DNA of 63,645 nucleotides, counting the filler, from Sluysia triapertura (Eukaryota), in NCBI GenBank assembly GCA_046118255.1. It is 5 parts of 5 records of this genome, joined end to end, with 100 filler letters (N's around TTAATTAATTAA, not from the genome) between each part and the next. Parts side by side here need not be neighbours in the genome. Positions count along the whole stretch, not along the records: positions 1 to 16,532 come from JBJNIA010201707.1; 4 more parts are not named here. The stretch is one strand, 5' to 3'. Shown piece by piece: positions 1 to 16,532 of this stretch. The notes below the pieces were generated by a model. That model did not search any database. It was not told the DNA's origin and saw only the letters and a list, made by a program, of their open reading frames with translations. Every line of letters starts with the position of its first letter. The stretch's first letter is position 1. Both the position numbers and the translations under genes were made by a program.

Positions 1-1
1 A

Positions 2-229
2 GATCTAAATTTAATAATTAAAGGAATAAAAATTAATGGGTATATTTGTCAATCAGGACATAAAAATATTGGGAATATTTATCAAAACGAACATCATAAT
101 CACGGCCATGTCATTCAAAACCATCAACAGAATTTAGGGAATGTTATTCAAAGAGATCAACAAAATTTAGGTGAAGTCATTCAAGATTTAAACCCTCGCC
201 TAGAGAAAGAACCAAAAATAGGTTTCTAA
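2..229 (+). CDS. 5'-truncated hypothetical protein with 11-aa Q/N/G repeats, ending DLNPRLEKEPKIGF
   Basis: Frame open from base 2 to TAA 227-229: ...QSGHKNIGNIY QNEHHNHGHVI QNHQQNLGNVI QRDQQNLGEVI QDLNPRLEKEPKIGF*. Confidence 0.7.
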   Translation, partial: DLNLIIKGIKINGYICQSGHKNIGNIYQNEHHNHGHVIQNHQQNLGNVIQRDQQNLGEVIQDLNPRLEKEPKIGF

Positions 230-244
230 AGGAGAATTTATGAA
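185..244 (+). repeat. 60-bp direct repeat, copy 1 (C-terminal tail + stop + RBS + next ATG)
   Basis: gatttaaaccctcgcctagagaaagaaccaaaaataggtttctaaaggagaatttatgaa is identical at 185-244 and 1873-1932. Confidence 0.97.
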
Positions 245-488
245 AATAAATAATATGCAAATAGAATGTTTAAAAAATGTTGAAAATCAACTAGCAGAAA
301 TATATAGCGATCTTATTAATTTAACAAATGAAATTAATAATGTTTATGTTCGTTCACAAGTAAATAGATTACTAAACAACATTAAAAGCACTAAGTGAGT
401 AGTTGAAAAAGTAGAATTAGATATTTCAGAAGAACAATTAATTCGAAATAGAAAAATTTTAGAAATAAAATTTGGTCATAAAAATTAG
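240..488 (+). CDS. Hypothetical helical protein (82 aa, code 4)
   Basis: AAGGAG RBS, ATG 240, one TGA=W, TAG 486-488. One extra A in the A5 run at 480-484 would give the C-terminus ...HKKLEF*. Confidence 0.7.
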
Positions 489-507
489 AATTCTAAAGGA
501 GAAATAT

Positions 508-849
508 ATGAAAACTAAAGAAATTATTAAAGTTGAAAATTTAGAACCAGTAAATGCTATAGATGATAATTATGAATTCAATGCTTATGAAGAATATAAA
601 GAAGCTCAAAATTTAATAAAAAACTATTTTCGCAAAACGAATCCGCACGAAAAAATCAGAGCGGGTGTTATTGCTAAAGAATATATTGTTGATAATTATC
701 CAATTATTAAACAACAAGCCCAAGACAAATGTTTAAATATGAAATGAATTGATAAATTCTACACATGTGAAATAGTTAAAAATACTTACGGAAAGCTATT
801 ATATGTGAAATTCAATGATCGAGAAATATTAAAAGAAATAGGAATATAG
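508..849 (+). CDS. Hypothetical protein (113 aa, code 4), paralog of the 16138 ORF
   Basis: AAGGAG RBS, ATG 508, reads through TGA 745-747 (KWIDKFY) to TAG 847-849; ends LKEIGI. Confidence 0.8.
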
Positions 850-876
850 GCGTAATTAAACCTAAACAAAACTAAA

Positions 877-1917
877 ATGGAAAATTTTAAATTATTAATT
901 TGAAAATATTTAGATGAATATAAAGGTGGCAAAAGATCTTTTATTCATTTTTACCAAGACATCATTCAACTAGAACCGGAAGGTTTTAGTGATTTTTGAA
1001 ATAACAATTTTAAAACAAAATATAATTCAACCAATTTTATTAGAAGATGCATTGGGGAATACGGTCGTAACAATAAAAACATCGTTTATTTCCGGAAAAC
1101 TGATAGCTACATGAAGATATTGCGCACTTACCAATATAAAAATGAAGTCGAATTTATTAATCAAACAAATGAGTCTTTACCTAATAAATATGATCACTCT
1201 GTAGAATATATGATTAAAACAAATTCCTTAAATATTGTGCAAGACCTAGAAAATTCTATTTATAGTTCTGTAACAGAAGGAAACCGAATAGATTCTATCG
1301 AAAAATTCGAACAAGCCCCTAATTCCTCTAGAGATAAAAAAGAAATTTTAAATATTTTAAAAGCTAGAGAATATTTAAATGAGAATAAGTCTAATGAAAA
1401 ATTAACTAAGGAAGATATTATTGTAATTTGAAGTTTAATATATCCTAAAGAATTGCATACATATAGAACTCAAAATGTTTTTATAACTGATGGATATAAG
1501 GCAATTGACCCATTATTGATTCAAAAAGAAATGAACAAATGAATCAAAGCATATAATATTAAACCTAAATCACCATCAGCGGCATTAATTAATTGTATGG
1601 TCCTGCATGCATGGTTTGAAAGCATTCACCCATTCCCTGATGGAAACGGTAGAACCGGAAGATTATTAAATGAATATTACTTTAAAATTCATAGATTAAC
1701 TAAAAATTGTACTTTAGATTACACGACATGAATTAATTTTCCTCCTTTATATAAACAAGAATTAAGAGCATTACAAGAAACAAAAAACATCGAAAATTAT
1801 ATAAAAACTAATATGAAATTTATTCATATAAATATTGAAAAATCTAAACAAATCAACAATACTAAATCAATTGATTTAAACCCTCGCCTAGAGAAAGAAC
1901 CAAAAATAGGTTTCTAA
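877..1917 (+). CDS. fic: Fic-domain protein (AMPylase-type), 346 aa
   Basis: Continuous code-4 ORF with canonical HPFPDGNGRTGR motif (~1627-1662) and an upstream SSVTEGN matching the (S/T)xxxE(G/N) inhibitory helix. Confidence 0.92.
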
Positions 1918-1932
1918 AGGAGAATTTATGAA
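1873..1932 (+). repeat. 60-bp direct repeat, copy 2
   Basis: Identical to 185-244; supplies the Fic C-terminus and the dnaG RBS/start. Confidence 0.97.
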
Positions 1933-3529
1933 TTTAAAATCAATCAATACTAAAGAATTCCTTAAAAAAATAGACATTGTTCAGGTAATAGGAAAGGAAC
2001 ATAACTTAATCAAAAAAGGTAGAAACTATATGTGTTTATGTCCATTCCATGCTGATAAGCACCCAAGTATGACCGTTTCACAATCTAAACAACTATATAA
2101 ATGTTTTTCATGCGGAGCTGGCGGCGATGCAATAAAATTTATTCAAGCTAGTAAAAAAATTTCATTCCCAGAAGCTATCAAATTACTATCTAAACAAAAC
2201 AACATAGATCTATCTAATATATCTTTATCAAAAAATATCAAAACATTCGATTTAAAATCTCAAATTTCATTTAAAGAATTAGAAAGATTTTATGAAATTA
2301 ATAATCAAGCTTTAAATTTCTATAAATATCAATTAAATAATAGCAAGCCTTGCCAAATTTATCTAAGTGAAAGACAAATAAATAATGATTCTATTAATAA
2401 ATATAAATTAGGTTATTCAGGTGAGTCAGAAAAATTTATCAATTATTTACTAGCTAAAGAATTTACAAACGAAGAAATTATTAAATATGGTTTAGGACAT
2501 TTAAATTCAGAAAATAAAATAGTTCCTAATTTTTACAATAGATTAATGTTTCCAATCTTTGATATTAACAATAATTGTGTAGGTTTTTCAGGAAGAGATA
2601 TAAATCAGAATCCACAAATTAAATATTTGAATTCGCCAGAGACACCTTATTACACAAAAGGAGATTATTTATTTAACTTAAACAATTCTAAAGATTTAAT
2701 TAAAAATAATAACCAAATCATAATTGTTGAGGGACCATTAGATTTAATATCTATTGGGCAAACAAAAGTTGAAAACACTGTTTGCTTATTCGGCACTTCG
2801 ATAACAAATCAACATATAAACCAAATTTCTAAATTAACAGAAAACATTGTTTTATCTTTAGACTCAGACAGTGCTGGTCAACTAGCTATAGAAAAATATC
2901 AAACTAAATTAAAAGATAAATTTAATCTCTATCGATTAAACTTAAACAATTCTAAAGATCCTGATGAATGAATAAAACAACATCCTAACAAATCAATATT
3001 AAACCAAATAGATTCTATTTCTGAACGAACGAATATTCAGATAATAGAAAATTCAAAAACAAATAAAGGAAATAATATGCAAATCAATCAATCAATGGAA
3101 GAATTTGAAAAACAAAAACAAGAATTTATTAATCAAATAGATTCTATTGCTAAACAAAACAACATCTCTTATGAGACAAATGATAAAGCTCAATTTGTTA
3201 AATTTACAAAAGATAACAAAACTTATCTAATTTGTACAAAATTTTATCCACGAAAAACAATCCCTAAAACAATTGAGGTCATTCCTCTTTCTAGCAGAAA
3301 TCAAATTGTTAATGAATTTAAGGTAAAATTAGGCCTAATTCAAGCAACTAAGAAAGAAGCAAATAAATCATACTCAAAAACAAAAACCAACGAAAAAACA
3401 ATAACTATTCCTATGGAGGAATACATAAAACTTTCTGAGTATAGATCTAAATATTTTAATTTAATAAAGTCTAAAGAATTCGAAAAAAAGCAAATTAATC
3501 TAGATAATTCACCAAAAATAGAATTCTAG
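1928..3529 (+). CDS. dnaG: DnaG-type DNA primase (CHC2 zinc finger + TOPRIM) with a 150-aa C-terminal extension, 533 aa
   Basis: CPFH..CFSC zinc-binding domain, KYLNSPET, VEGPLD, DSDSAG, KDPDEW. TGA 2969 is Trp and the frame continues without a stop into the 3077-3529 ORF. Confidence 0.92.
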
Positions 3530-3557
3530 ATATAATAAAAATTCAAACTTTAGTTTA

Positions 3558-3586
3558 AATAGTAGAAAAAAAATCTACTATTTTTT
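3558..3586 (+). terminator. Intrinsic terminator after dnaG
   Basis: aatagtaga-(A7)-tctactatt stem followed by a T run. Confidence 0.7.
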
Positions 3587-3784
3587 ATATATAAATTTAA
3601 TAATTACAGTTTTTAAAATATTTAAAATTTTAAGAAAACAACTAGTATAGTAAATATATATACTAATTAAAATTTAATTATATTTAACATTATTATTAAC
3701 ATTAATATAACATTAATATAACATTAGGAATTTTTAAATTCTTTTAAACCCTTTAATAGAACCATTTTTTTATATAATTTTTTT

Positions 3785-3869
3785 TTCAATAAAGGAAAAA
3801 CTATACTTCAATAAAGGAAAAACTATACTTCAATAAAGGAAAAACTATACTTCAATAAAGTAAAACTAT
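3785..3869. repeat. Replication origin iterons (3 perfect 22-bp units + 1 degenerate)
   Basis: ttcaataaaggaaaaactatac at 3785, 3807 and 3829, then ttcaataaagtaaaactat. An AT-rich region with 11-bp taacattaata repeats (~3697-3726) lies upstream, and rep lies immediately downstream. Confidence 0.9.
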
Positions 3870-3933
3870 TAATAAATAAGTAAAAATATATATAAAAATA
3901 CTTTTTAATAAAAATTTAGTATATAATTAAAAC

Positions 3934-4707
3934 ATGGTTAATAATATATATATGTCTAAAAAACTAGAAATGATTTTAAAAGATGAAAAAGTGATTATTA
4001 GTAATAATTTTGCTCAATCACATTTATCACACAATCTAAATAAAATACAGTGAAATATATTTTTCTATGGAATATTAAAAATAAATAAATGCAAAGATAA
4101 TATATGTAAATTTTATGTTCAAGATTTTTGTAATGATAGTGGTTTATTAATAAATAATTTTTATAATTATGCCGAATCTAATTTTAAATTTATTAGAACA
4201 TTAGCCATTACTACTAAAAATCCTAAATATAAAATATATTCAGAAACTAATATTTTTTCAAAAATAAATTATGAAGATGGAGAAATTTCTTTTGTAATAA
4301 ATCCTGATCTCCTAGATGAATTTAAAAATTTATCTAAAAATTGTACATACCAAGATTTTAAAACTTTTATAAGTTTTAATAGTAGTTATTCAAAAAGAAT
4401 ATATATTTATTTTCGAAGTTTATATATTCCTAATAAGGAAATTTCTAAAATTTTTACAATAGAAGAATTTCAATCAATTTTTGATGTTCAAAAAACATAT
4501 AAATCTACTAGTGATATTAAAAAAACAATAATAGATAATTCCTTAAATGATATAAATGAAAATTGTGAAGATTTTTTAATGTCTTATAGTGATATTAAAA
4601 AACCTAACAGTAAAAAAATAATAGGATTTAAATTTAAAGTTATACCGAGGGTTAAAGGTTTATTTGTGCAAGAACAACTAGAAAAAGGAGAAAGTGAATC
4701 CTTATAA
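3934..4707 (+). CDS. rep: Plasmid replication initiator, Rep_3/RepB family (~257 aa; alternative start 3952)
   Basis: Code-4 ORF absent from the ORF track. ISNNFAQS..LNKIQWNIF, SFVINPDL..F.NL, FNSSYSKRIY, IEEFQSIF..Y..IKK.II..L.DIN and KIIGFKF resemble Rep_3 winged-helix initiators; adjacent to iterons. Confidence 0.85.
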
Positions 4708-4717
4708 GGAGAAAGAT

Positions 4718-6589
4718 ATGAAAAAGTGATTAACTAGTTTAGGAATGATAGGAATTTTAAGTTTTGGAACAGGAACAATTACTCAAGCCACTTACAATAT
4801 TGTTTCACAAAATTTAAAGACAATAAATTTTACTTTTGAAAATGTCAATGTAAAAACTACTGCTCAATTTACCGGTATATATCAAGATAAATTTGGGTAT
4901 TTATGGGCTAAAGCTACACCTGATGTACTTAAAAAACCTCTAGTTGGAGGTCTATGAAAATCTACCGATGGAGGAAAAACTTTTACCCAAATAACTAACG
5001 GTATTGGAAGCGATTGAACTATTCTATTTATATTTCAAGACAAAAATGGTGTATATTGAACCGGCGGTTTACTAAAAGGTCTATGAAAATCTACCGATGG
5101 AGTAAATTTTACCCAAATAACTAGTAGCGGAATCGGAACCGATTGAAATATAAATGGTGTATTTCAAGACAAATCAGGAATCATATGAGTTGGTGTGTGT
5201 GGTGGTAATGTTCATCCCTATGAGCTATTAAAATCTACTGATGGAGGGAATACTTTTACCCCAGTGACCGTATCTAATGCATCATATAAAGACGTAACTA
5301 TTTATTTTCAAGATAAAAACGGATATATGTGACTTACTGCAAATGATGGGTTATATAAAACATCTGATGGAATAAATTTTATAAGAATTCCTGACACTCC
5401 CACAGTATCATTTAAATATGTCATTGAGCTTGCCCAAGATAAAGCTGGAAATATATGAGCTGCTATAGATATGAGAGGTCTATGAAAATCTACCGATGGA
5501 GTAAATTTTACAAATACCTGAGTAAATAATAGTTCCATATCGTGCATTCTTCAAGACAAAATAGGCATATATTGAATATCATATGGTGGATTATCTAAAT
5601 CTACCGATGGAGTAAATTTTACAGATATAACTTTTAACCAAGAAATCGGAGTGAATTCAATTTTTCAAGATGATATTGGAAATCTTTGAGTTGCCACCAC
5701 CGGCGGAATATTTAAATCTACTGATGAAAATTTTAATGGTGTAGGATATAAAACCCAAGGTAAAGAAGTGGTTGCCTTTTATCAAGGACAACCTTATAAG
5801 TTTATTAATGCCGATACATTGTTTTACGTTAATGATAGTGCAGTTGACAAAGTAACTATCAATGGGAAAGATTATATTAATACTGGTGAATTTAATTATA
5901 CGTTAACAGCAAAAGAAAATGGAGGAATATTTAATATTGTTGTATCTAAAAAAGACAAAACATCACAAAACTATTATTTTTATATTAAACAAAGTGTTAA
6001 CCCCTCAACTAACCAATTCTCCACAGATAATGCTTATAAATTAACGCAATATCTCGGACAATATAATTGAGGAAAAGAAACAATTAATTTCTTATTCGTT
6101 CAAGGAGATAATGGTTCACCGGATCTAAAATATATTTTAAACGACCCAATTTTAGATTTAACAACTTCTACTTATCAAAGTTGTGATATGGTGAACGGAA
6201 AAATTGTTCTTAAAGGACAAGCAACCAAGTTTCCCCAAAATAACGGGGTCATTTCCGGTTATGGGTTATATTTAATGACTATTCAAGACAAGCTAGGAAA
6301 TAAAATTCAATACTTATTACAAGTAGGTAAAACTACTGAAAAACCTATCGTTCAAAAAGCCGAGGATAAAAAGGCTAGTGGAACTTCGCTAATCCCCGGG
6401 AAACCAATTCCTCCAGCACCAAATAATTCTACAAATGGTTTAAATAATGGAACAATTGCTTTAATAGCTATGGCTTCTGTTGCAATTTTTTTACTAGCAT
6501 GCTCATTAACATATCGTTTTGGAATTGCCCGTAGAAAATATCTCAAAAAATTAAAACAACACAAGGAGGCAGGTGGTAAAGATGATTAG
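4718..6589 (+). CDS. Surface-anchored 7-bladed beta-propeller adhesin-like protein (623 aa)
   Basis: N-terminal MKKWLTSLGMIGILSFG signal; seven QD(K/D)xGxxW...(W/Y/F)KSTDG repeats (BNR/Asp-box and Reg_prop-like); Pro-rich linker; C-terminal TM helix and basic tail. Merges track ORFs 4745, 5768 and 6188. Confidence 0.85.
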
Positions 6590-7872: not shown

Positions 7873-10251
7873 ATGACAAACTATGATAAACAAAAAGTAA
7901 TTATTCCTAAAAGTAGTAAAAAAGTAGGAATCTATTGATTTAAAAACCTTAACAGTTTTGAGCTGTTATGGCTAGTCGGTTTAGTAATTATTGATGTTTT
8001 TATTATCGGCTTCTCATCTGGGATTGCATTCAGAATCATTATCACTATTGTTTTATTCTTAATTGGTTTAATTTCAGTTTTGAATTTTAACGGTAAAAAA
8101 ATTTACCAGATGTTTTATATATACCTAAAATGACTCCATGTTATTAAGCATGATGTGATAGGTTATAAAGAAGTTAAAGATAATAATTATCAAATTAATA
8201 ATCAATATTTTAGTTGTTTTTCCATTAATGCTGAGTCTATTGACTTTCTATCAGAAGAAGATGTTCATAAAGTTTTAGCTAACTTTTGAAATTTAATCAA
8301 ATCTATCCCAAATGGGTGTTTTATCAAAATCCCCCAAACATATAATTTTGATAGTTATCATGAGATGATTAAAAATTTCTCTAAAAACTTTCTTTTAAAA
8401 GAAGAAAAAATAATCAATAACTTTACAAATTCTCAAAATGTTAGTGAAATTTACTTTGTCGTTTATGATTCTAAGCTAGAAAAATTAAACACTTATAAAA
8501 ACAAGTTAATTTCTTTTTTCAATAATAACTTTATTAAGTATTCTCAAACATCATTTGACAAAATAAGAAATTATTTTGGTTCTAATTGAACTTTTGAAAA
8601 TAAAAACTTTATTAAGAAAAATAAAGACAAAGGTTTTATTTGACAAGTTCGCGATATGGCCATTGAGAATAATTCATTCTTTTTAAGGGATTTGTTTAAT
8701 GTTAAAAATTGTTTTACTATTTTAAATTTCAAAGAAATTGAACAACAAACAGCTAAAAAACAATTAGATAATATCATTAATAAAATAAACTATAATCAAA
8801 CAAAATATTCCAAATCATCACAAATGATGGAATCAAACATGATCTTTGATGCAATAAATTTACAATTAAGTTCGATTGTTGATAACACCGATAGTTTTAA
8901 ATTAATCGATTTATATGTAGGATCTATCTCTTCAAATAAATCTGATTTAGTTGCCGCCGATGCGGCTATAAGAAATAGTTGTAAAATTGCCAACTTCTCT
9001 TTAGACACATTTAAAAATGAACAACACCTAATGCTTAAAAAAGCCTTATCATTCCAAAATACTTTAAACCGTAATTCATTAAATATGACAGGTGAAAGTT
9101 TAGCATGTGGTTACTTTTTATCTAAAAACATTTTAAAAGATGAAAAAGGTATGCTAGTTGGCGCTGATAACCAAGGAAACCCCGTATTTTTAAATATCTT
9201 TACAATTAATAATAAACGTAAACATCATAACTGTGTGTTGTTTGGAACGCCGGGGTCTGGCAAAACAACCCTCCTAAAAAAAATGTTAGTTTGAAATAAT
9301 TTAAACAAACATCGTATTTTTTTAATCGATGTCGAAGATGAATATTCCGAATGATTTAAAGAACAACAAGGGAAAATCATTGATTTAGCTGGTGGCAAAA
9401 CAACCATAAATCCTTTAGAAATTTTCCTAGATGAAGGAACTAGTTATAGAGCTAACATATCAACGCAATTGATTATGTTATCTAACTTTTTATTAATGTT
9501 GTATCCAGCAATCGAACAAGCCCCCAAAGAATACATTTTAAAAGTCATTGAAAAATTATATAAAAAACTACTAAAAAATGAAAATTCTAAAAATATAAAA
9601 TGATTCACATTTAGTGATGTGATCAAAGAAGCTAAGAAAGATAAAGAACAATATGAAATTGTTTCTTTCTACTTAGAACCATTAATTCAACGATATGGTG
9701 AATATTGAAACAAACCAACTAATATAACTATAAATTCTAAAGATATGTTGATTTGCGCTAGATTACAAAATAAAGACAATCAAGAAATCGATATGGATTC
9801 TAAAGTATTATCAATTCAAATTTATTTAATAACTAAGTATTTAAATAAAATCATCTACTCTGCTAGAGAAACAAACCAACGTTGCCTAATAATTTTAGAC
9901 GAAGCCCATAAGTTAGTAAGCGACGATAATGAATTCATCCTAACCTATTTATCAAACCTTTCTAAACGTGTAAGAAAATATAATACCGCTCTAATTTTAG
10001 CAACACAAAACATTTCTGATTTTACATCTAGTAAAACCAATGAAAAATATTTCTCAAACATTTTTAAATGTATGCAGTATTTCTTTTATGGTGGCATGCA
10101 TGCCCAAGATATATCTTCTCTAGATTCTTTATTAAAAGATTCTGGAGGGTTAACTGATTCCCAAAAATCTTTTTTAACTATTGCTGAAAAAGGCCAGTTC
10201 ATTTTACAAACAGATAATACTAATTTCATTAGCTTAAAGGTGTTGATATAA
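7873..10251 (+). CDS. virB4: VirB4/TraE conjugation ATPase with N-terminal PrgI/VirB3-like TM domain (792 aa)
   Basis: Continuous in code 4. N-terminal VIIPK.. plus 2 TM; HNCVLFGTPGSGKT Walker A; IILDEAH Walker B; KRVRKYN..LATQ. Confidence 0.92.
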
Positions 10252-10253
10252 CT

Positions 10254-11837
10254 ATGAAAACAAAAATAATTAATTTTTTACTAGATAACAAGTGAAAAAT
10301 ATTTTGAAATATATTAGGAATCATTCTTTTATTCATAATCTTAGGCTTTATATTTAATGCCTTTAGATGAATATCATTAGACCATTTAAAGGGTTCGTTC
10401 ATAAAAGAGATTTACGCTCCCCTATTTGGTTGAGGTTTCTTAGCTGCTATTGTAATAGTTATTGGTGGTAACATCTACTTTTATTTTCATCCATCTAGAA
10501 ATAGATCTATAAAAGCTAAACCTCTTTTGAAAGTAAACATCTTAGAACACGATAAAGACGGTTATGTTGTTACAAGTAAAAAATCTAATGGCAAAATCAC
10601 TTCTGAAATCATTCAAGATACACATGCTTTAATTGTTGGTGGTACACGTAGTGGCAAAACGCAAGGAATTGCTCTTCCATCGATATTTATGAATATTCAT
10701 TCATCTAACCCACCAAGTTTGGTTATAACTGATCCTAAAGGGGAAATATACCAACAAATGAAAGGTTATTTAGCAAAAGAAAATTATAATATTCAATGTT
10801 TGAATTTAACAAATGATTCTACAGACCATGACATTTATTGAAATCCCTTAGAAAAGTTTTATTTAGAATTTAAAAAAGATAAGTCTAATGAAAATTTAAT
10901 GGACATTAGAACTGAAATCGAAGAATATTTAGAAAAAATATTAATCAAAGCAGAAAATGAAAAAGCATCTTTTTTTACCATTTCTGCTAATACATTAATT
11001 AACGATGTAATTATTGAATTCATGAAATTAAAAACAACGACCGTTAAAGATTTTAATATGTCAGCAATTTATAATATTTTTAAAAACGTTACAAATTTTA
11101 CTCAATTTGTTTATTCTCTGCCAGTAAATGAACAATATAAATTCAAAGAATATACTCAAGCCACAGGCCAATTTGACGGTATAAGAGGAACTGCCGCTCA
11201 AAGCTTGAAGTTTTTTTCTAAAGCTAGAATAGAAAAAATAACTTCTAAAAACACTTTAGAATTATCAAAATTTAGAGCCGATAAAAATGTTATCTTTATT
11301 ATCTTTAAAGAAGATGATGAAATTTCCCATTTTTTAGTTTCCGCTTTCATTGCCGAATTATATAAAGTTTTCCGTGAAGACAAAACTCATAGAAAAATAT
11401 ATTTGTTTTTAGATGAATTCGGTAATTTACCAATAATTAATAACTTTGAAAAAGCCTTATCATTGGGTGCTGGTTATGGAATTTACTTTTGTTTTGTATT
11501 GCAAACAATTTCCCAACTAAAACTTTACGCAAGTTTTAACTCTGGAAAAGAACAAATCATTTTAGATAATGTAAATTGTCTATTTTTACTAGATATCAAA
11601 AATAATAAAGATGCTGATTATTTTTCCAAACGTTTAAGAACCAAAAATATTACGGTTACATCATCAACAAGATCTGCTAAAGGAGATATTTCCACACACG
11701 AATCTTCTCGTGAAGTTGCAATTATCTCTAGCAACGATTTATTAAGTTTAGAAAAATGAGAATGTGTTGTTCAAACACCTAAATCATATCCAAGAAAAAT
11801 TAAACTTCTACCTTTCTATCAGTTTGATTTAAAATAA
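10254..11837 (+). CDS. virD4: VirD4/TraG type IV coupling protein (527 aa)
   Basis: 2 N-terminal TM; HALIVGGTRSGKTQ; TDPKGE; WNPL; LDEFGNL; LQTISQL. Confidence 0.93.
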
Positions 11838-13436: not shown

Positions 13437-13558
13437 ATTATTCTCCTTATAAACCTAATTTTTAGGTCCCTTTGAAATAAAATTGCCAGAGCAATTAAAA
13501 TAAAGGTAACTAAAAATTTATAAGAGAATAATCTAATGAATAGAGTAATTGGGAATTT
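13405..13558. promoter_or_regulatory. Long imperfect hairpin A overlapping the ssb RBS/start
   Basis: aaattcccaattac/gtaattgggaattt (14 bp perfect), attattctc.ttataaa/tttataagagaataat, apical aattgc-caga-gcaatt. Confidence 0.75.
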
Positions 13559-14107: not shown

Positions 14108-14220
14108 ATTAATCCTTTTGACCTAATTTTTTAGGTCTCGCAGAGATAAAATTGCCAGAGCAATTAAAATAAGAGACCCTAAAAAATATTCAAGATTAAT
14201 ATGGCTACTGAAAATTAAAA
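14088..14220. promoter_or_regulatory. Long imperfect hairpin B overlapping the start of the 14107 gene
   Basis: catattaatc/gattaatatg, ttttttaggtctc/gagaccctaaaaaa, and the same 27-nt apical core as hairpin A. Confidence 0.75.
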
Positions 14221-14464
14221 TAAAAACAACTGCTGAAAAAGATTATAATAAAGATGTTTACTTTAAATTAATTTGGAGTAAATATTCTAGTAACATCAAA
14301 ATCACTTTTGATCAAAATTTAAGTAGCTGAAAAGCTACTTTTTTTGTATATCAAAACCACAAAAATAACCTAATTTGTTTATATATATTTATATATAAAT
14401 ATATATAACATTTTTTTCTTATCTCGTTTCCCTTTTTACTAGTATAATTAGAGAGTGAATCAAA

Positions 14465-16129
14465 ATGAAATATTTTCAATCTCAAATTTCCGCCCCTGAA
14501 ATCCCTTTCAAGTCTAATATTGAAGAGCAGCTTCAATCTCAGCTTGAAAATTTGGGCGAACGCGCCGCGAAAAAACGCGGCGAAAAAATTCCTGACGGAA
14601 TTTTTTTAAAGTTTAATAATCTTATAGAAAAAATTTTTGCGGTGTGTACTACTGAGATTCCGCCAGTGGCGCAATTGGGTTTGTTTACCTCAGGCAATGA
14701 AAATGAACTTAAAAATAAAATAGAAACTAAATTTAAAACTATCTTAAAACAAAATAATATTAAAAAATCTAATTACAAAATTAAAACAAAATTTAATAAA
14801 AAAGAAAACAAATATGAAACAATAGCTTACTGAAATAAAAATGCTAGTAACAAATCTAAAACAAATAGAATTCATATTAAATCAGAATTCAAAACTAGAA
14901 ATACTTTTTATAAATCAGAAAACGTTTCTAAATTACTAGCTAGTAAAGAAATTTTAAATAATCCACTATTAAAAATCACTAAAGAAAAAATATCTCTAGA
15001 AGATAATGTCTTAATAAGAGCAAAATTTGTAGACATAAATACAAAAAACTATAAATTTTACACATCATCTACTAAAGACGATAGCTATCTAGATTACATT
15101 TTAAGAAAACAAGCAATCTCTAAAGAAAATAATAATATAATTGAAATTCCAAACAGCACTGAAAAAGAAAATTATCTAGATTATATGGTCAATCGAACAA
15201 AAACTGAGGGCTGCTTTGATAAACATGGAAACTATTATGATTCCCAAAAATTGAAAAGCGAAAGCATTCAACTAGAAAAAAATTCTAAAAATGGTGTTTT
15301 TGTTTGAGATATAGTTATAAATTTTAAACAAGACTTTTCTAATGAATATGATCTATATGAACCAGATAAATATTTAAGAAAAATTATCGCTGAAGAAGTA
15401 ACTAACATTTATAAGAATTCAAATATAGATCCTAAAAATCTCCAAATGAAATTTGTCTTTCACACTAATACAGAAAATCCCCACTTTCATTGTTTCGTTA
15501 ATGAAATTAGACACTTAAATAAAAAAGCTAAACTACAAAATGATATGGGGGATATATTTATTCATGCCAAACAAAATATTATTTCAAGAATTATTAGTTG
15601 TGAAGAAAGAAATATTGAACTTAAAAATAAACCAAAAATAAACTATTATTATTCGGTAGCTTATAAAAAAACTCATAACCATGAAGTTGCATTAAAATAC
15701 TCAGAATTAAAAATTTATGAATTAAATTTAGATAAAGAATTAAATTTAAATTCTAAAAAAATAGAAATTTTAGGAAGTTATGAACAATTAAAAGCAGAAT
15801 ATTTAAAAACTTTAAAAAACAAAATCATCTTAGCTAAAGACGATGATATGCAAATTTGTTTTACAAAATTAAAACCTCAACAAAAACAAACTCTATCTCC
15901 TTTAGAAAGAAAACAAAAACAAATAAATGATTCCCTATATTTAGAGCTGATAAAAATGAGATCACTAAATGAAATGAAGGCCAACATTAAATTAACAAAA
16001 GAAATAATCAAACATAGTTATGATATTCAACACAACATCGATATCAATAAAACTTTATCTACTAAAAACCAACTATCAAAAACATCTAAAACTCATTCAA
16101 AAGAGAATGATTTAGATATTTCTTATTAG
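14465..16129 (+). CDS. mobL: MobL-family relaxase (up to 554 aa; true start uncertain)
   Basis: Continuous in code 4. YLDYILR, YLDYMVNR..EGCFD, VWDIVINF and FHTNTENPHFH (HxNTxNxHxH) are MOBL motifs. Confidence 0.85.
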
Positions 16130-16137
16130 GAGTAATT

Positions 16138-16532
16138 ATGGATGACGAATTAAAAAATTACAACAAGGCATGTGAATTTATATCTAAATATTTTTTAGAA
16201 AAAAATTCTCAACAAAAACTATCTCTAGCTATCAAAGCTATAAAATTCATAAGATCTAACTACGATGAAATTATGGATGAAGTTAGTTATCAAGAAAAAA
16301 ATTACAGTACTAAGTGAATTGATAAATTCTATAATGCAAAAATAGCTACAAATCAACAAACAAAACAAAAATATTTATCTTTTGCTGTTAAGTCTTTAAG
16401 TGGAACGCACATTTCACCTGAACAAAAAATAGCTAGAATAGATAAATTTATTAACCAAATAGATTCTATTGCTAAACAAAACAACATCTCTTATGAGACA
16501 AATGATAAAGCTCAATTTGTTAAATTTACAAA
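16138..16532 (+). CDS. 3'-truncated chimeric hypothetical protein
   Basis: AGGAG RBS. N-part is homologous to 508-849 (..YF..N..K....NY..I....KWIDKFY); last 77 bp are identical to 3134-3210 in the DnaG extension. Confidence 0.8.

What the first reader, a model, noticed from the sequence alone, without database searches (positions are those of the whole stretch)
185..1932. Portable 60-bp 'tail+stop+RBS+ATG' joint bracketing a three-gene Fic cassette
An exact 60-bp repeat encodes the last 14 aa of one gene and the RBS/start of the next. Degenerate versions occur at ~480-512 (aaaaattagaattctaaaggagaaatatatgaa) and ~3512-3529 (ccaaaaatagaattctag). Recombination between the copies would excise, duplicate or insert ORF240-ORF508-fic while leaving both flanking genes intact. 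Any ORF captured in frame in front of the repeat would gain the tail. Inference: a recombinase-free cassette or terminal-reassortment mechanism for building cargo arrays.
Basis: partly seen in the sequence, partly recalled or inferred. Interest (0 to 1): 0.75.

Follow-up and report, generated by a model that had tools for sequence, protein, structure and literature searches.

The report
Duplicated 60-bp gene junction on plasmid
Two identical 60-base gene-to-gene junctions bracket a three-gene Fic block on a mycoplasma-like conjugative plasmid; they are real and look like the scar of one recent recombination between similar junction sequences, a known way mobile DNA becomes mosaic, not a new cassette system.

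Summary
Window 185-244 and 1873-1932 are 100% identical. Each copy supplies 14 codons (DLNPRLEKEPKIGF), TAA, AGGAG and ATGAA, and the flanks are unrelated. Read with TGA=Trp, the copies bracket ORF1, ORF2 and an intact class-II-type Fic gene, upstream of a DnaG-type primase. The contig is a 16.5-kb Mollicute conjugative-plasmid-like sequence inside a 619-Mb eukaryote assembly.

The degenerate copies at 481-503 and 3500-3528 are also real (core: 4 hits against 0.07 expected). One is out of frame with its gene. A fifth copy on another contig lies in non-coding DNA. So the conserved unit is DNA or RNA, not the peptide tail.

Paralogues of ORF0 and of Fic elsewhere in the assembly lack the tail, so the 60-mer was grafted onto at least ORF0. 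ORF0-like and ORF2-like genes are neighbours in three other loci, so the left copy is not a cassette edge.

The 60-mer occurs only twice in the assembly. Reads could not be examined.

Best reading: a recent recombination scar between members of a small junction-element family, matching the "short conserved boundary sequence" model of phage mosaicism. A dedicated cassette mechanism is not supported.

The parts
2..229 (+). ORF0, cut by the contig start. It has 11-residue repeats (33-bp tandem units) and its last 14 codons plus stop come from repeat copy 1.
   Evidence: (D2). Paralogues of 145-167 aa on C254872, C22472 and C12379 carry more repeat units and a different ~35-aa C-end.
185..244 (+). 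Repeat copy 1 (R): 14 codons, TAA, AGGAG, ATGAA of ORF1. Probably the derived copy.
   Evidence: The flanks are unrelated to those of copy 2.
240..488 (+). ORF1, 82 aa (code 4), an orphan with no family.
   Evidence: No other copy in the assembly.
481..503 (+). J1, a degenerate junction element between ORF1 and ORF2 (AAAATTAGAATTCTAAAGGAGAA). The ORF1 stop TAG lies inside it, in a different frame from the tail.
   Evidence: D15; 0 of 300 shuffles reach the score against R.
508..849 (+). ORF2, 113 aa. It belongs to a small family (85-aa paralogues next to ORF0-like genes, and the N part of gene 16138).
877..1917 (+). Fic gene, 346 aa, intact under code 4. It has HPFPDGNGR at residue 251 and SSVTEG at residue 130. 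Its last 14 codons plus stop come from repeat copy 2.
   Evidence: The paralogue on C56370 (83% nt, 80% aa) ends NNTKI* without the tail. Homology runs from the start codon to 1866, then ATTTAAACC after a 7-nt gap.
1873..1932 (+). Repeat copy 2 (R) at the Fic-primase junction. Probably the source copy.
   Evidence: Its left end matches the 3' end of the Fic paralogue. Its similarity to the C190794 element continues past its right end into ATGAATTTAAAA.
1928..3529 (+). DnaG-type primase (zinc ribbon, DNAG_N, Toprim) with an extra orphan C-domain from about 3077. It ends ...LDNSPKIEF*.
   Evidence: The C-domain has no relatives by word search.
3485..3547 (+). J4, the junction-family element at the primase end. 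It is an inverted repeat and holds a promoter-like TTCACC-17-TATAAT at 3508-3536.
   Evidence: D13; fold z=-5.1. It is 81% identical to non-coding C190794:18-80(-).
3123..3210 (+). First copy of the 88-bp repeat (99%) whose second copy ends the contig.
   Evidence: (D5).
16138..16532 (+). Chimeric gene (ORF2-like N part plus primase C-domain), cut by the contig end. 16456-16532 is an exact 77-nt copy of 3134-3210.

Best explanation
R is the youngest pair in a small family of gene-end/junction elements of about 30-45 nt. The shared part is CTAGA..(A)CC-AAAAATAG-RW-TTCTA-R. It is followed either by AAGGAGAA-N4-5-ATGAA (RBS type: ORF0>ORF1, ORF1>ORF2, Fic>primase) or by ATATAAT (promoter-like type: primase end and contig C190794). 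All copies lie on the coding strand of one operon of a Mollicute conjugative-plasmid-like replicon.

The two identical copies come from one recent DNA-level copy event, with no substitution in 60 nt while paralogous genes differ by 17-25%. Most likely the Fic>primase junction was copied onto the ORF0>ORF1 junction. The right-hand join would lie in the RBS/ATGAA stretch that all these junctions already share. The left-hand join would be an illegitimate one inside the ORF0 repeats. The alternative route is unequal crossing-over at the shared junctions followed by a deletion.

The event overwrote the native 3' end of ORF0, which now reads 14 codons into the element and stops at its TAA. The element supplies the Shine-Dalgarno sequence and start codon for the next gene. 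The peptide tail is a by-product of reading into a DNA/RNA-level element.

While the copies stay identical they are a substrate for homologous or slipped-strand deletion of the 1628-bp ORF1-ORF2-Fic block, or for its duplication in multimers. That would leave ORF0-R-primase intact, but it is the generic behaviour of direct repeats.

Shown: the repeat, the element family, the tail-less paralogues, the conserved ORF0-like/ORF2-like neighbourhood. Inferred: the direction of copying, the recombination route, any present-day excision, and what the core does.
For: Repeat and flanks:
- The repeat is exact and has unrelated flanks.

Element family:
- The core is over-represented: 4 hits against 0.07 expected.
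- R against J1, J4 and the C190794 element each exceed 299-300 of 300 dinucleotide shuffles.
- An nhmmer profile finds exactly these copies and no others in 67 kb of this organism's sequence.
- J1 is out of frame with ORF1 and the C190794 copy has no ORF, so the conserved unit is nucleic acid.

Tail-less paralogues:
- ORF0 paralogues (4 genes on 3 contigs) have more repeat units and a different C-end.
- The Fic paralogue ends NNTKI* with different flanks.
- ORF0-like genes are followed by ORF2-like genes in C254872, C22472 and C12379. The left copy therefore sits inside an old gene neighbourhood.

Direction of copying:
- ATTTAAACC at the 3' end of the Fic paralogue matches the left end of R.
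- The similarity of copy 2 to the C190794 element runs on into the first primase codons.

Precedent:
- In mycobacteriophage Island3, gene 68 is flanked by ~50-bp repeats that encode the shared 18 C-terminal residues of two adjacent genes. This was explained by recombination at short boundary sequences (PMC3029335).
- Direct repeats on plasmids are prone to RecA-independent loss (PMC7063769, abstract only).
Against:
- The history cannot be reconstructed uniquely, and every route needs at least one illegitimate join at 184/185.
- The evidence for direction rests on 9 nt and about 12 AT-rich nt.
- The function of the core is unknown. R itself does not fold better than shuffles (z=-1.1), and RNAalifold finds no shared structure across four members.
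- No relatives exist in any collection searched. The claim that there is no variable content therefore rests on an absence of comparators, not on conserved comparators.
Confidence: 0.55

Rival explanations
1. R is a dedicated, portable joint, a recombinase-free functional analogue of an integron attC. Recombination between joints routinely inserts, excises and reorders promoterless ORFs, building cargo arrays and giving captured ORFs a common tail.
For: - R is grafted onto two unrelated genes.
- Related joints lie at four junctions of one operon.
- The Fic gene behaves as a module whose homology with its paralogue starts at the start codon and ends at the edge of R.
- The same contig shows a second in-frame 3' swap.
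Against: - There are only 2 copies of R in the assembly and no extra family members in 67 kb of this organism's sequence.
- The core was not found in 401 Mycoplasmatales genomes, PLSDB or metagenome and viral contigs.
- The left copy lies inside a conserved ORF0-like/ORF2-like neighbourhood.
- The family members differ by 13-21%, too much for efficient homologous exchange except between the one identical pair.
Confidence: 0.12
2. Assembly artefact. Two plasmid variants, or a collapsed repeat, were threaded into one path, so the two R copies are not on one molecule in this order.
For: - The contig re-enters itself at its 3' end: a 77-nt exact repeat, 16456-16532 = 3134-3210.
- The Mollicute part of the assembly is highly fragmented.
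- Reads could not be checked.
Against: - The contig stops exactly 77 nt into a repeat, which points to k of about 77. A 60-nt repeat is shorter than that, so each copy with both flanks must lie within single k-mers (inference).
- The segment 245-1872 between the copies is unique in the assembly, so the path ORF0-R-ORF1...Fic-R-primase has no alternative.
- Both fusions are in frame.
Confidence: 0.1
3. The core is kept by selection as a working site. It could be a palindromic operator or promoter spacer (TAGAATTCTA), or an RNA hairpin before the RBS, for example for translational coupling or transcript stability. The identical pair would then reflect gene conversion between two old functional sites rather than a new graft.
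For: - J4 forms a hairpin far more stable than shuffles (z=-5.1) and overlaps the best promoter-like site of 1-4200.
- The same element lies in a non-coding divergent-promoter region on C190794.
- AATAG-N1-2-TTCTA occurs 7 times, all on the + strand, against 0.32 expected.
- Hairpin-plus-RBS leaders precede two minus-strand genes.
Against: - R and J1 do not fold better than shuffles and there is no consensus structure.
- ORF0 paralogues have no R-like sequence after their stops, so an old site at ORF0>ORF1 is not supported.
- No binding protein has been identified.
Confidence: 0.15
4. The peptide tail (…PKIGF / …PKIEF) is a functional C-terminal signal. It could, for example, mark Fic, primase and ORF0 for export through the plasmid's type IV secretion system into recipient cells.
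For: - Three proteins of one operon end in PKI[GE]F in the same frame.
- The contig encodes a VirD4-type coupling protein and a VirB4-like ATPase.
- Transfer of primases and Fic proteins through conjugative systems is known from other plasmids (background knowledge, not tested here).
Against: - The J1 copy is out of frame and the C190794 copy is non-coding.
- The Fic and ORF0 paralogues lack the tail.
- Identity includes the untranslated RBS and the start codon, which points to DNA-level copying.
Confidence: 0.05

Closest known systems
Short conserved boundary (linker) sequences at module junctions in mosaic phage genomes. Worked example: mycobacteriophage Island3 gene 68 against Brujita (PMC3029335).
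   Same: The repeats are tens of bp long and lie at gene ends. They encode the shared C-terminal residues of two adjacent, otherwise unrelated genes and bracket an inserted or deletable gene block. General recombination enzymes suffice and no site-specific recombinase is needed.
   Different: Here the element is on a Mollicute plasmid-like replicon. The repeat also carries the RBS and start codon of the next gene, and it belongs to a small family with a non-coding member. No sister genome with the alternative arrangement is available.
Integron gene cassettes with attC (59-base elements)
   Same: An element of about 60 bp follows each promoterless ORF and overlaps gene ends, and the idea is of an array of exchangeable ORFs.
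   Different: R has no GTTRRRY or RYYYAAC core sites. No integrase was detected on the contig. There are only two identical copies, and there is no shared inverted-repeat structure.
Deletion or duplication between short direct repeats on plasmids (RecA-dependent or slipped-strand)
   Same: Two identical 60-bp direct repeats 1.7 kb apart on a multicopy replicon are a standard substrate for this.
   Different: This is a property that follows from the structure. No deletion product was observed here.
Homology-facilitated illegitimate recombination (one short homologous anchor, one illegitimate join)
   Same: The right edge of R lies in the RBS/ATGAA stretch shared by the junctions. The left edge is a sharp join inside the ORF0 repeats with no homology.
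   Different: This process is known from natural transformation experiments (background knowledge). Here it is only an inferred route.

Membership tests
Integron cassette / attC site | Inverse core RYYYAAC and core GTTRRRY at the two ends of the element | tested here: not met
   A regex on both strands of R found no match for either.
Integron cassette / attC site | An adjacent IntI-type tyrosine recombinase and an attI site | tested here: not met
   Pfam scans of 20 ORF pieces on the contig gave Rep3, DnaG/Toprim, Fic, T4CP, VirB4-like and weak relaxase matches, but no integrase. The membrane-protein ORFs and some short pieces were not scanned, and the contig may be incomplete.
Integron cassette / attC site | A conserved imperfect inverted-repeat structure across sites | tested here: not met
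   RNAalifold predicted 0 pairs for four family members. Only J4 folds better than shuffles.
Boundary-sequence mosaic junction (phage/plasmid module exchange) | A short sequence shared at the junctions of otherwise unrelated genes, located at gene ends | tested here: met
Boundary-sequence mosaic junction (phage/plasmid module exchange) | Alternative modules found between the same boundaries in related genomes | tested here: inconclusive
   No related replicon was found in any collection. Within the assembly, the Fic paralogue has different flanks and no R.
Transposable element with target-site duplication | A transposase and terminal inverted repeats inside the duplicated flanks; a short duplication | tested here: not met
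   The ends of 245-1872 match in only 16 of 40 positions as inverted repeats. The insert encodes ORF1, ORF2 and Fic only. A 60-bp duplication is far longer than usual target-site duplications (background knowledge).
Fic/Doc family (the middle gene) | A Fic domain with the motif HPFx[D/E]GN[G/K]R | tested here: met
   PF02661 at E=5.3e-10 on piece 1543-1728; HPFPDGNGR at residue 251.
Fic/Doc family (the middle gene) | Class II arrangement: an inhibitory [ST]xxxE[GN] helix N-terminal to the core in the same chain | tested here: inconclusive
   SSVTEG is present at residue 130. No structure or Fic_N match was obtained, and the N part has no relatives.
Translational-coupling hairpin that masks the next RBS | A stable stem that pairs the upstream gene's last codons with the SD of the next gene | tested here: inconclusive
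   The minimum-energy fold of R pairs CCU with AGG of the SD at -8.8 kcal/mol, but z is only -1.1 against shuffles.

The most novel reading that the evidence does not exclude
The junction family is a purpose-built linker set. Each promoterless gene of the plasmid's accessory operon ends in the same stop-RBS-start element. Short-homology recombination between these elements, within and between co-resident plasmids, reshuffles, deletes and duplicates single genes without any site-specific recombinase. This would be an integron-like cargo system in wall-less bacteria, where integrons are not known (background knowledge). The 60-bp pair would be the freshest exchange.
Probability: 0.1. Interest if true: 0.7.

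Novelty: new member of a known kind. Interest (0 to 1): 0.3.

Why it matters
If the best reading is right, this is a clean example on a Mollicute plasmid of how short shared junction sequences let genes be grafted and lost with reading frames and translation signals preserved. That adds an instance to a known principle and little beyond it. It would matter more if population or long-read data showed the Fic block coming and going at these joints. Fic enzymes modify target proteins, and such turnover would show that a symbiont's plasmid swaps such cargo by a simple repeat-driven route. The host replicon is of some independent interest. It carries Rep3 with iterons and a Firmicute-type conjugation set, and the four proteins searched (the N part of Fic, Rep, the primase C-domain and the coupling protein) have no relatives, or only distant ones, in the collections searched.

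Tried and rejected
- **Reads.** Junction, circle and coverage tests were not done.
- **Related replicons.** None found.
  - PLSDB megablast and blastn gave no match.
  - An exact-protein look-up for the primase was not on record.
  - A genome-contig scan with the primase returned only chromosomal dnaG at about 35% identity.
  - The Fic N part had only two marginal hits (E about 1e-4 to 1e-3, 20-28% identity) in 401 Mycoplasmatales genomes and 0 hits in 1.84 billion representatives.
  - The primase C-domain and Rep had no hits by word search.
  - The coupling protein is at most 29% identical to those of Firmicute plasmids.
- **Core pattern elsewhere.**
  - 0 hits in 401 Mycoplasmatales genomes at up to 1 mismatch.
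  - 0 hits in metagenome contigs with two patterns and 0 in viral contigs.
  - At 2 mismatches in the own assembly, hits equal the control and belong to an AT-rich host repeat.
- **R after ORF0 paralogues.** The idea that R is native downstream of ORF0 paralogues was rejected: the similarity is no better than shuffles.
- **R after the Fic paralogue.** The idea that R continues downstream of the Fic paralogue beyond ATTTAAACC is not significant (232 of 500 shuffles reach the score).
- **Shared hairpin.** RNAalifold finds no pairs. A covariation argument from two members was judged too thin.
- **Function of ORF0, ORF1, ORF2.** Pfam, PHROGs and the Atlas gave nothing.
- **Naming the Mollicute.** Not possible.
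Full report
**What the sequence is**

The piece is a whole contig, G000:C201707, 16,532 bp, of a 619-Mb assembly in 263,945 contigs, which is a eukaryote-sized assembly. Long reading frames appear only when TGA is read as Trp (against 4, 5). GC is 26%. It is therefore DNA of a Mollicute-type bacterium carried in the host assembly.

Under code 4 the gene order is as follows (domain calls):
- ORF0, 2-229, cut by the contig start, with 11-residue repeats
- ORF1, 240-488
- ORF2, 508-849
- Fic, 877-1917
- A DnaG-type primase with an extra C-domain, 1928-3529
- Three and a half 22-bp iterons, 3785-3865
- A Rep3 initiator, 3934-4707
- A lipoprotein-like gene with Asp-box-type repeats (by eye; no Pfam family), 4718-6589, followed by membrane proteins
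- A VirB4-like ATPase, 7873-10251
- A VirD4-type coupling protein, 10254-11837
- Four minus-strand small genes
- A weakly relaxase-like gene, 14465-16129
- A gene cut by the contig end, 16138-16530

This is a conjugative-plasmid-like replicon.

**The observation**

The 60-mer at 185-244 is identical to 1873-1932. In frame 0 it reads DLNPRLEKEPKIGF and TAA. AGGAGAATTT and ATGAA follow, and that ATG is the start of ORF1 in one copy and of the primase in the other. The 120 nt on each side of the copies are no more alike than shuffled sequence, so this is a sharp island of identity.

- 481-503 is 87% identical over 23 nt and 3500-3528 is 79% over 29 nt.
- The 16-nt core hits four times, all on the + strand, against 0.07 expected.
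- Local alignments of R against both exceed 299-300 of 300 dinucleotide shuffles.

**The conserved unit is nucleic acid, not peptide**

Three points support this:
- The copy at 481 is in a different frame from ORF1, whose TAG stop lies inside it.
- A fifth member on contig C190794 (18-80, minus strand) is 81% identical to 3485-3547. It has no ORF in front of it, only 18 codons between stops.
- That fifth member lies 25 nt from a 96% copy of window 14372-14447, the palindromic region upstream of the relaxase-like gene. It therefore sits in a divergent promoter region.

The primase-end member and the C190794 member end in ATATAAT. Together with TTCACC or TTCACA 17 nt upstream, this makes the best promoter-like site of 1-4200. 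R and the 481 copy end instead in AAGGAGAA plus ATGAA. The primase-end member folds far better than shuffles (z=-5.1), but R and the 481 copy do not. RNAalifold finds no shared structure. What the core does remains open.

**How R relates to the genes it touches**

Other contigs of the same assembly carry paralogues.
- ORF0-like genes on C254872 (two copies), C22472 and C12379 are 111-167 aa long; three of the four (145-167 aa) share a common ~35-residue C-end unlike the R tail, the 111-aa copy ends earlier, and two have more 11-residue units than ORF0. None has an R-like sequence after the stop. ORF0 has therefore lost its native 3' end and reads into R.
- In all three contigs the ORF0-like gene is followed, directly or after one small ORF, by an 85-aa homologue of ORF2. 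The neighbourhood ORF0...ORF2 is therefore old. The left copy of R lies inside it and not at the edge of an inserted ORF1-ORF2-Fic unit.
- A Fic paralogue on C56370 is 83% identical in DNA from its start codon to window position 1866 and has unrelated flanks. After a 7-nt gap it matches ATTTAAACC at the left end of R and stops there (NNTKI*), without the tail. Further downstream similarity is not significant.
- The similarity between R and the C190794 element runs past the right end of R into the first primase codons (ATGAATTTAAAA), but not into ORF1.

Taken together, these points suggest weakly that the Fic-primase copy is the source and the ORF0-ORF1 copy is derived.

**Is it portable?**

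- The 60-mer occurs only twice in the 619-Mb assembly.
- A profile of the family finds only the five known members in 67 kb of this organism's sequence.
- The 21-nt core-plus-RBS with up to one mismatch is absent from 401 Mycoplasmatales species genomes, where the control pattern hit once.
- Patterns for both element types are absent from metagenome contigs, and the RBS-type pattern is absent from viral contigs.
- PLSDB has no DNA match.
- Looser matches in the host assembly equal the control and belong to a host repeat.
- No related replicon could be found by protein either.
- No contig shows an empty site or a circle junction.
- The read test could not be run.

**Is it an artefact?**

The contig ends exactly 77 nt into an exact copy of 3134-3210. 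This is what a de Bruijn contig at k of about 77 does when it re-enters itself. A 60-nt repeat is shorter than that, so each copy with both flanks should have been seen in single k-mers. The segment between the copies is unique in the assembly. I take the structure as real, with about 10% reserved for a chimera. This is inference, not read evidence.

**Mechanism**

The simplest account has two steps.
1. The operon's junctions already shared a stop-RBS-start element.
2. One recent event copied the Fic-primase junction onto the ORF0-ORF1 junction. The right join lies in the shared RBS/ATGAA stretch. The left join is an illegitimate one at 184/185, at the end of an 11-residue unit and in frame.

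A two-step alternative gives the same product: unequal crossing-over at the shared junctions, followed by a deletion from ORF0 into the first Fic copy. Either way the tail on ORF0 is a by-product.

The same contig shows a second in-frame 3' swap. Gene 16138 joins an ORF2-like N part to the primase C-domain at 99% DNA identity. Such grafts therefore recur in this replicon.

The identical pair can now mediate deletion or duplication of the 1628-bp block. This is the generic behaviour of direct repeats on plasmids (PMC7063769, abstract only).

**Comparison with known systems**

The closest known case is the boundary-sequence model of phage mosaicism. In its worked example, mycobacteriophage Island3 gene 68 is flanked by ~50-bp repeats that encode the shared 18 C-terminal residues of two adjacent genes, and this was attributed to general recombination (PMC3029335).

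R is not an integron attC:
- It has no core sites.
- No integrase was found among the ORF pieces scanned.
- The family members share no predicted structure.

It is also not a transposon target duplication.

**Verdict**

The repeat is real and is a neat example of a known kind of recombination footprint. The cassette-system reading is not excluded (about 10%) but has no positive support. Interest is modest.

Noticed in passing
window 16445-16532 and 3123-3210: An 88-bp repeat at 99%, of which the last 77 nt are exact, ends the contig. The path re-enters itself, which gives a 13,322-bp cycle (Rep3, iterons, T4SS, relaxase) plus a 3.1-kb entering arm (ORF0 to the N part of primase). No other contig offers an exit. 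There may be two plasmid forms, or one larger molecule with a collapsed repeat.
   Followed up: partly
window 16138-16530: A chimeric gene joins an ORF2-like N domain (KWIDKFY motif) in frame to the orphan C-domain of the primase. This is a second 3'-end graft on the contig.
   Followed up: partly
window 217, 1287, 1905, 3007, 3136, 3517, 16458: The near-palindromic motif AATAG-N1-2-TTCTA occurs 7 times, all on the + strand, against 0.32 expected. Several hits lie inside coding sequence, where they read N[QR]IDSI. It could be a protein-binding site or a repeated peptide motif.
   Followed up: partly
window 3508-3588: A promoter-like TTCACC-17-TATAAT lies inside the primase-end element. About 20 nt later comes a hairpin with a T run (3559-3588), just before the iterons and rep. 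It could make a short RNA or act as the operon terminator.
   Followed up: no
window 3785-3865 and 3934-4707: Three and a half 22-bp direct repeats (iterons) lie upstream of a Rep3-type initiator. This is a theta-type plasmid origin in a TGA=Trp organism. The Rep has no relatives by word search.
   Followed up: partly
window 14372-14447; C190794:106-181: A 30-nt perfect AT palindrome (14379-14408) lies upstream of the relaxase-like gene and is 96% conserved on another contig, next to a GIY-YIG-like gene (by eye). It is a candidate oriT or divergent promoter.
   Followed up: no
window 13444-13516 and 14113-14185 (minus-strand genes): A 73-nt leader repeat (78% identical) sits in front of two small genes. 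Each has a hairpin, ACCTAAAAATTAGGT or GACCTAAAAAATTAGGTC, just before the RBS, with folds at z about -2.3 to -2.5.
   Followed up: partly
window 4707-6345; more than 15 other contigs (L126-L148): The lipoprotein-like gene with Asp-box-type repeats belongs to a large paralogue family (64-91% DNA identity) scattered over many short contigs. On C33584 its 3' end abuts the 3' end of the VirB4-like gene, which is a deletion variant.
   Followed up: no
C254872, C22472, C12379 (L006, L007, L116): These contigs hold a family of 145-167-aa proteins with 11-residue repeats (xHxNxGxIxQx), each next to an 85-aa ORF2-like gene. No database family matches.
   Followed up: partly
C44349 (L119): This contig holds the glycyl-tRNA synthetase and dnaG pair of what appears to be the same TGA=Trp organism. 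Its chromosomal DnaG is 47% identical to the plasmid primase.
   Followed up: no
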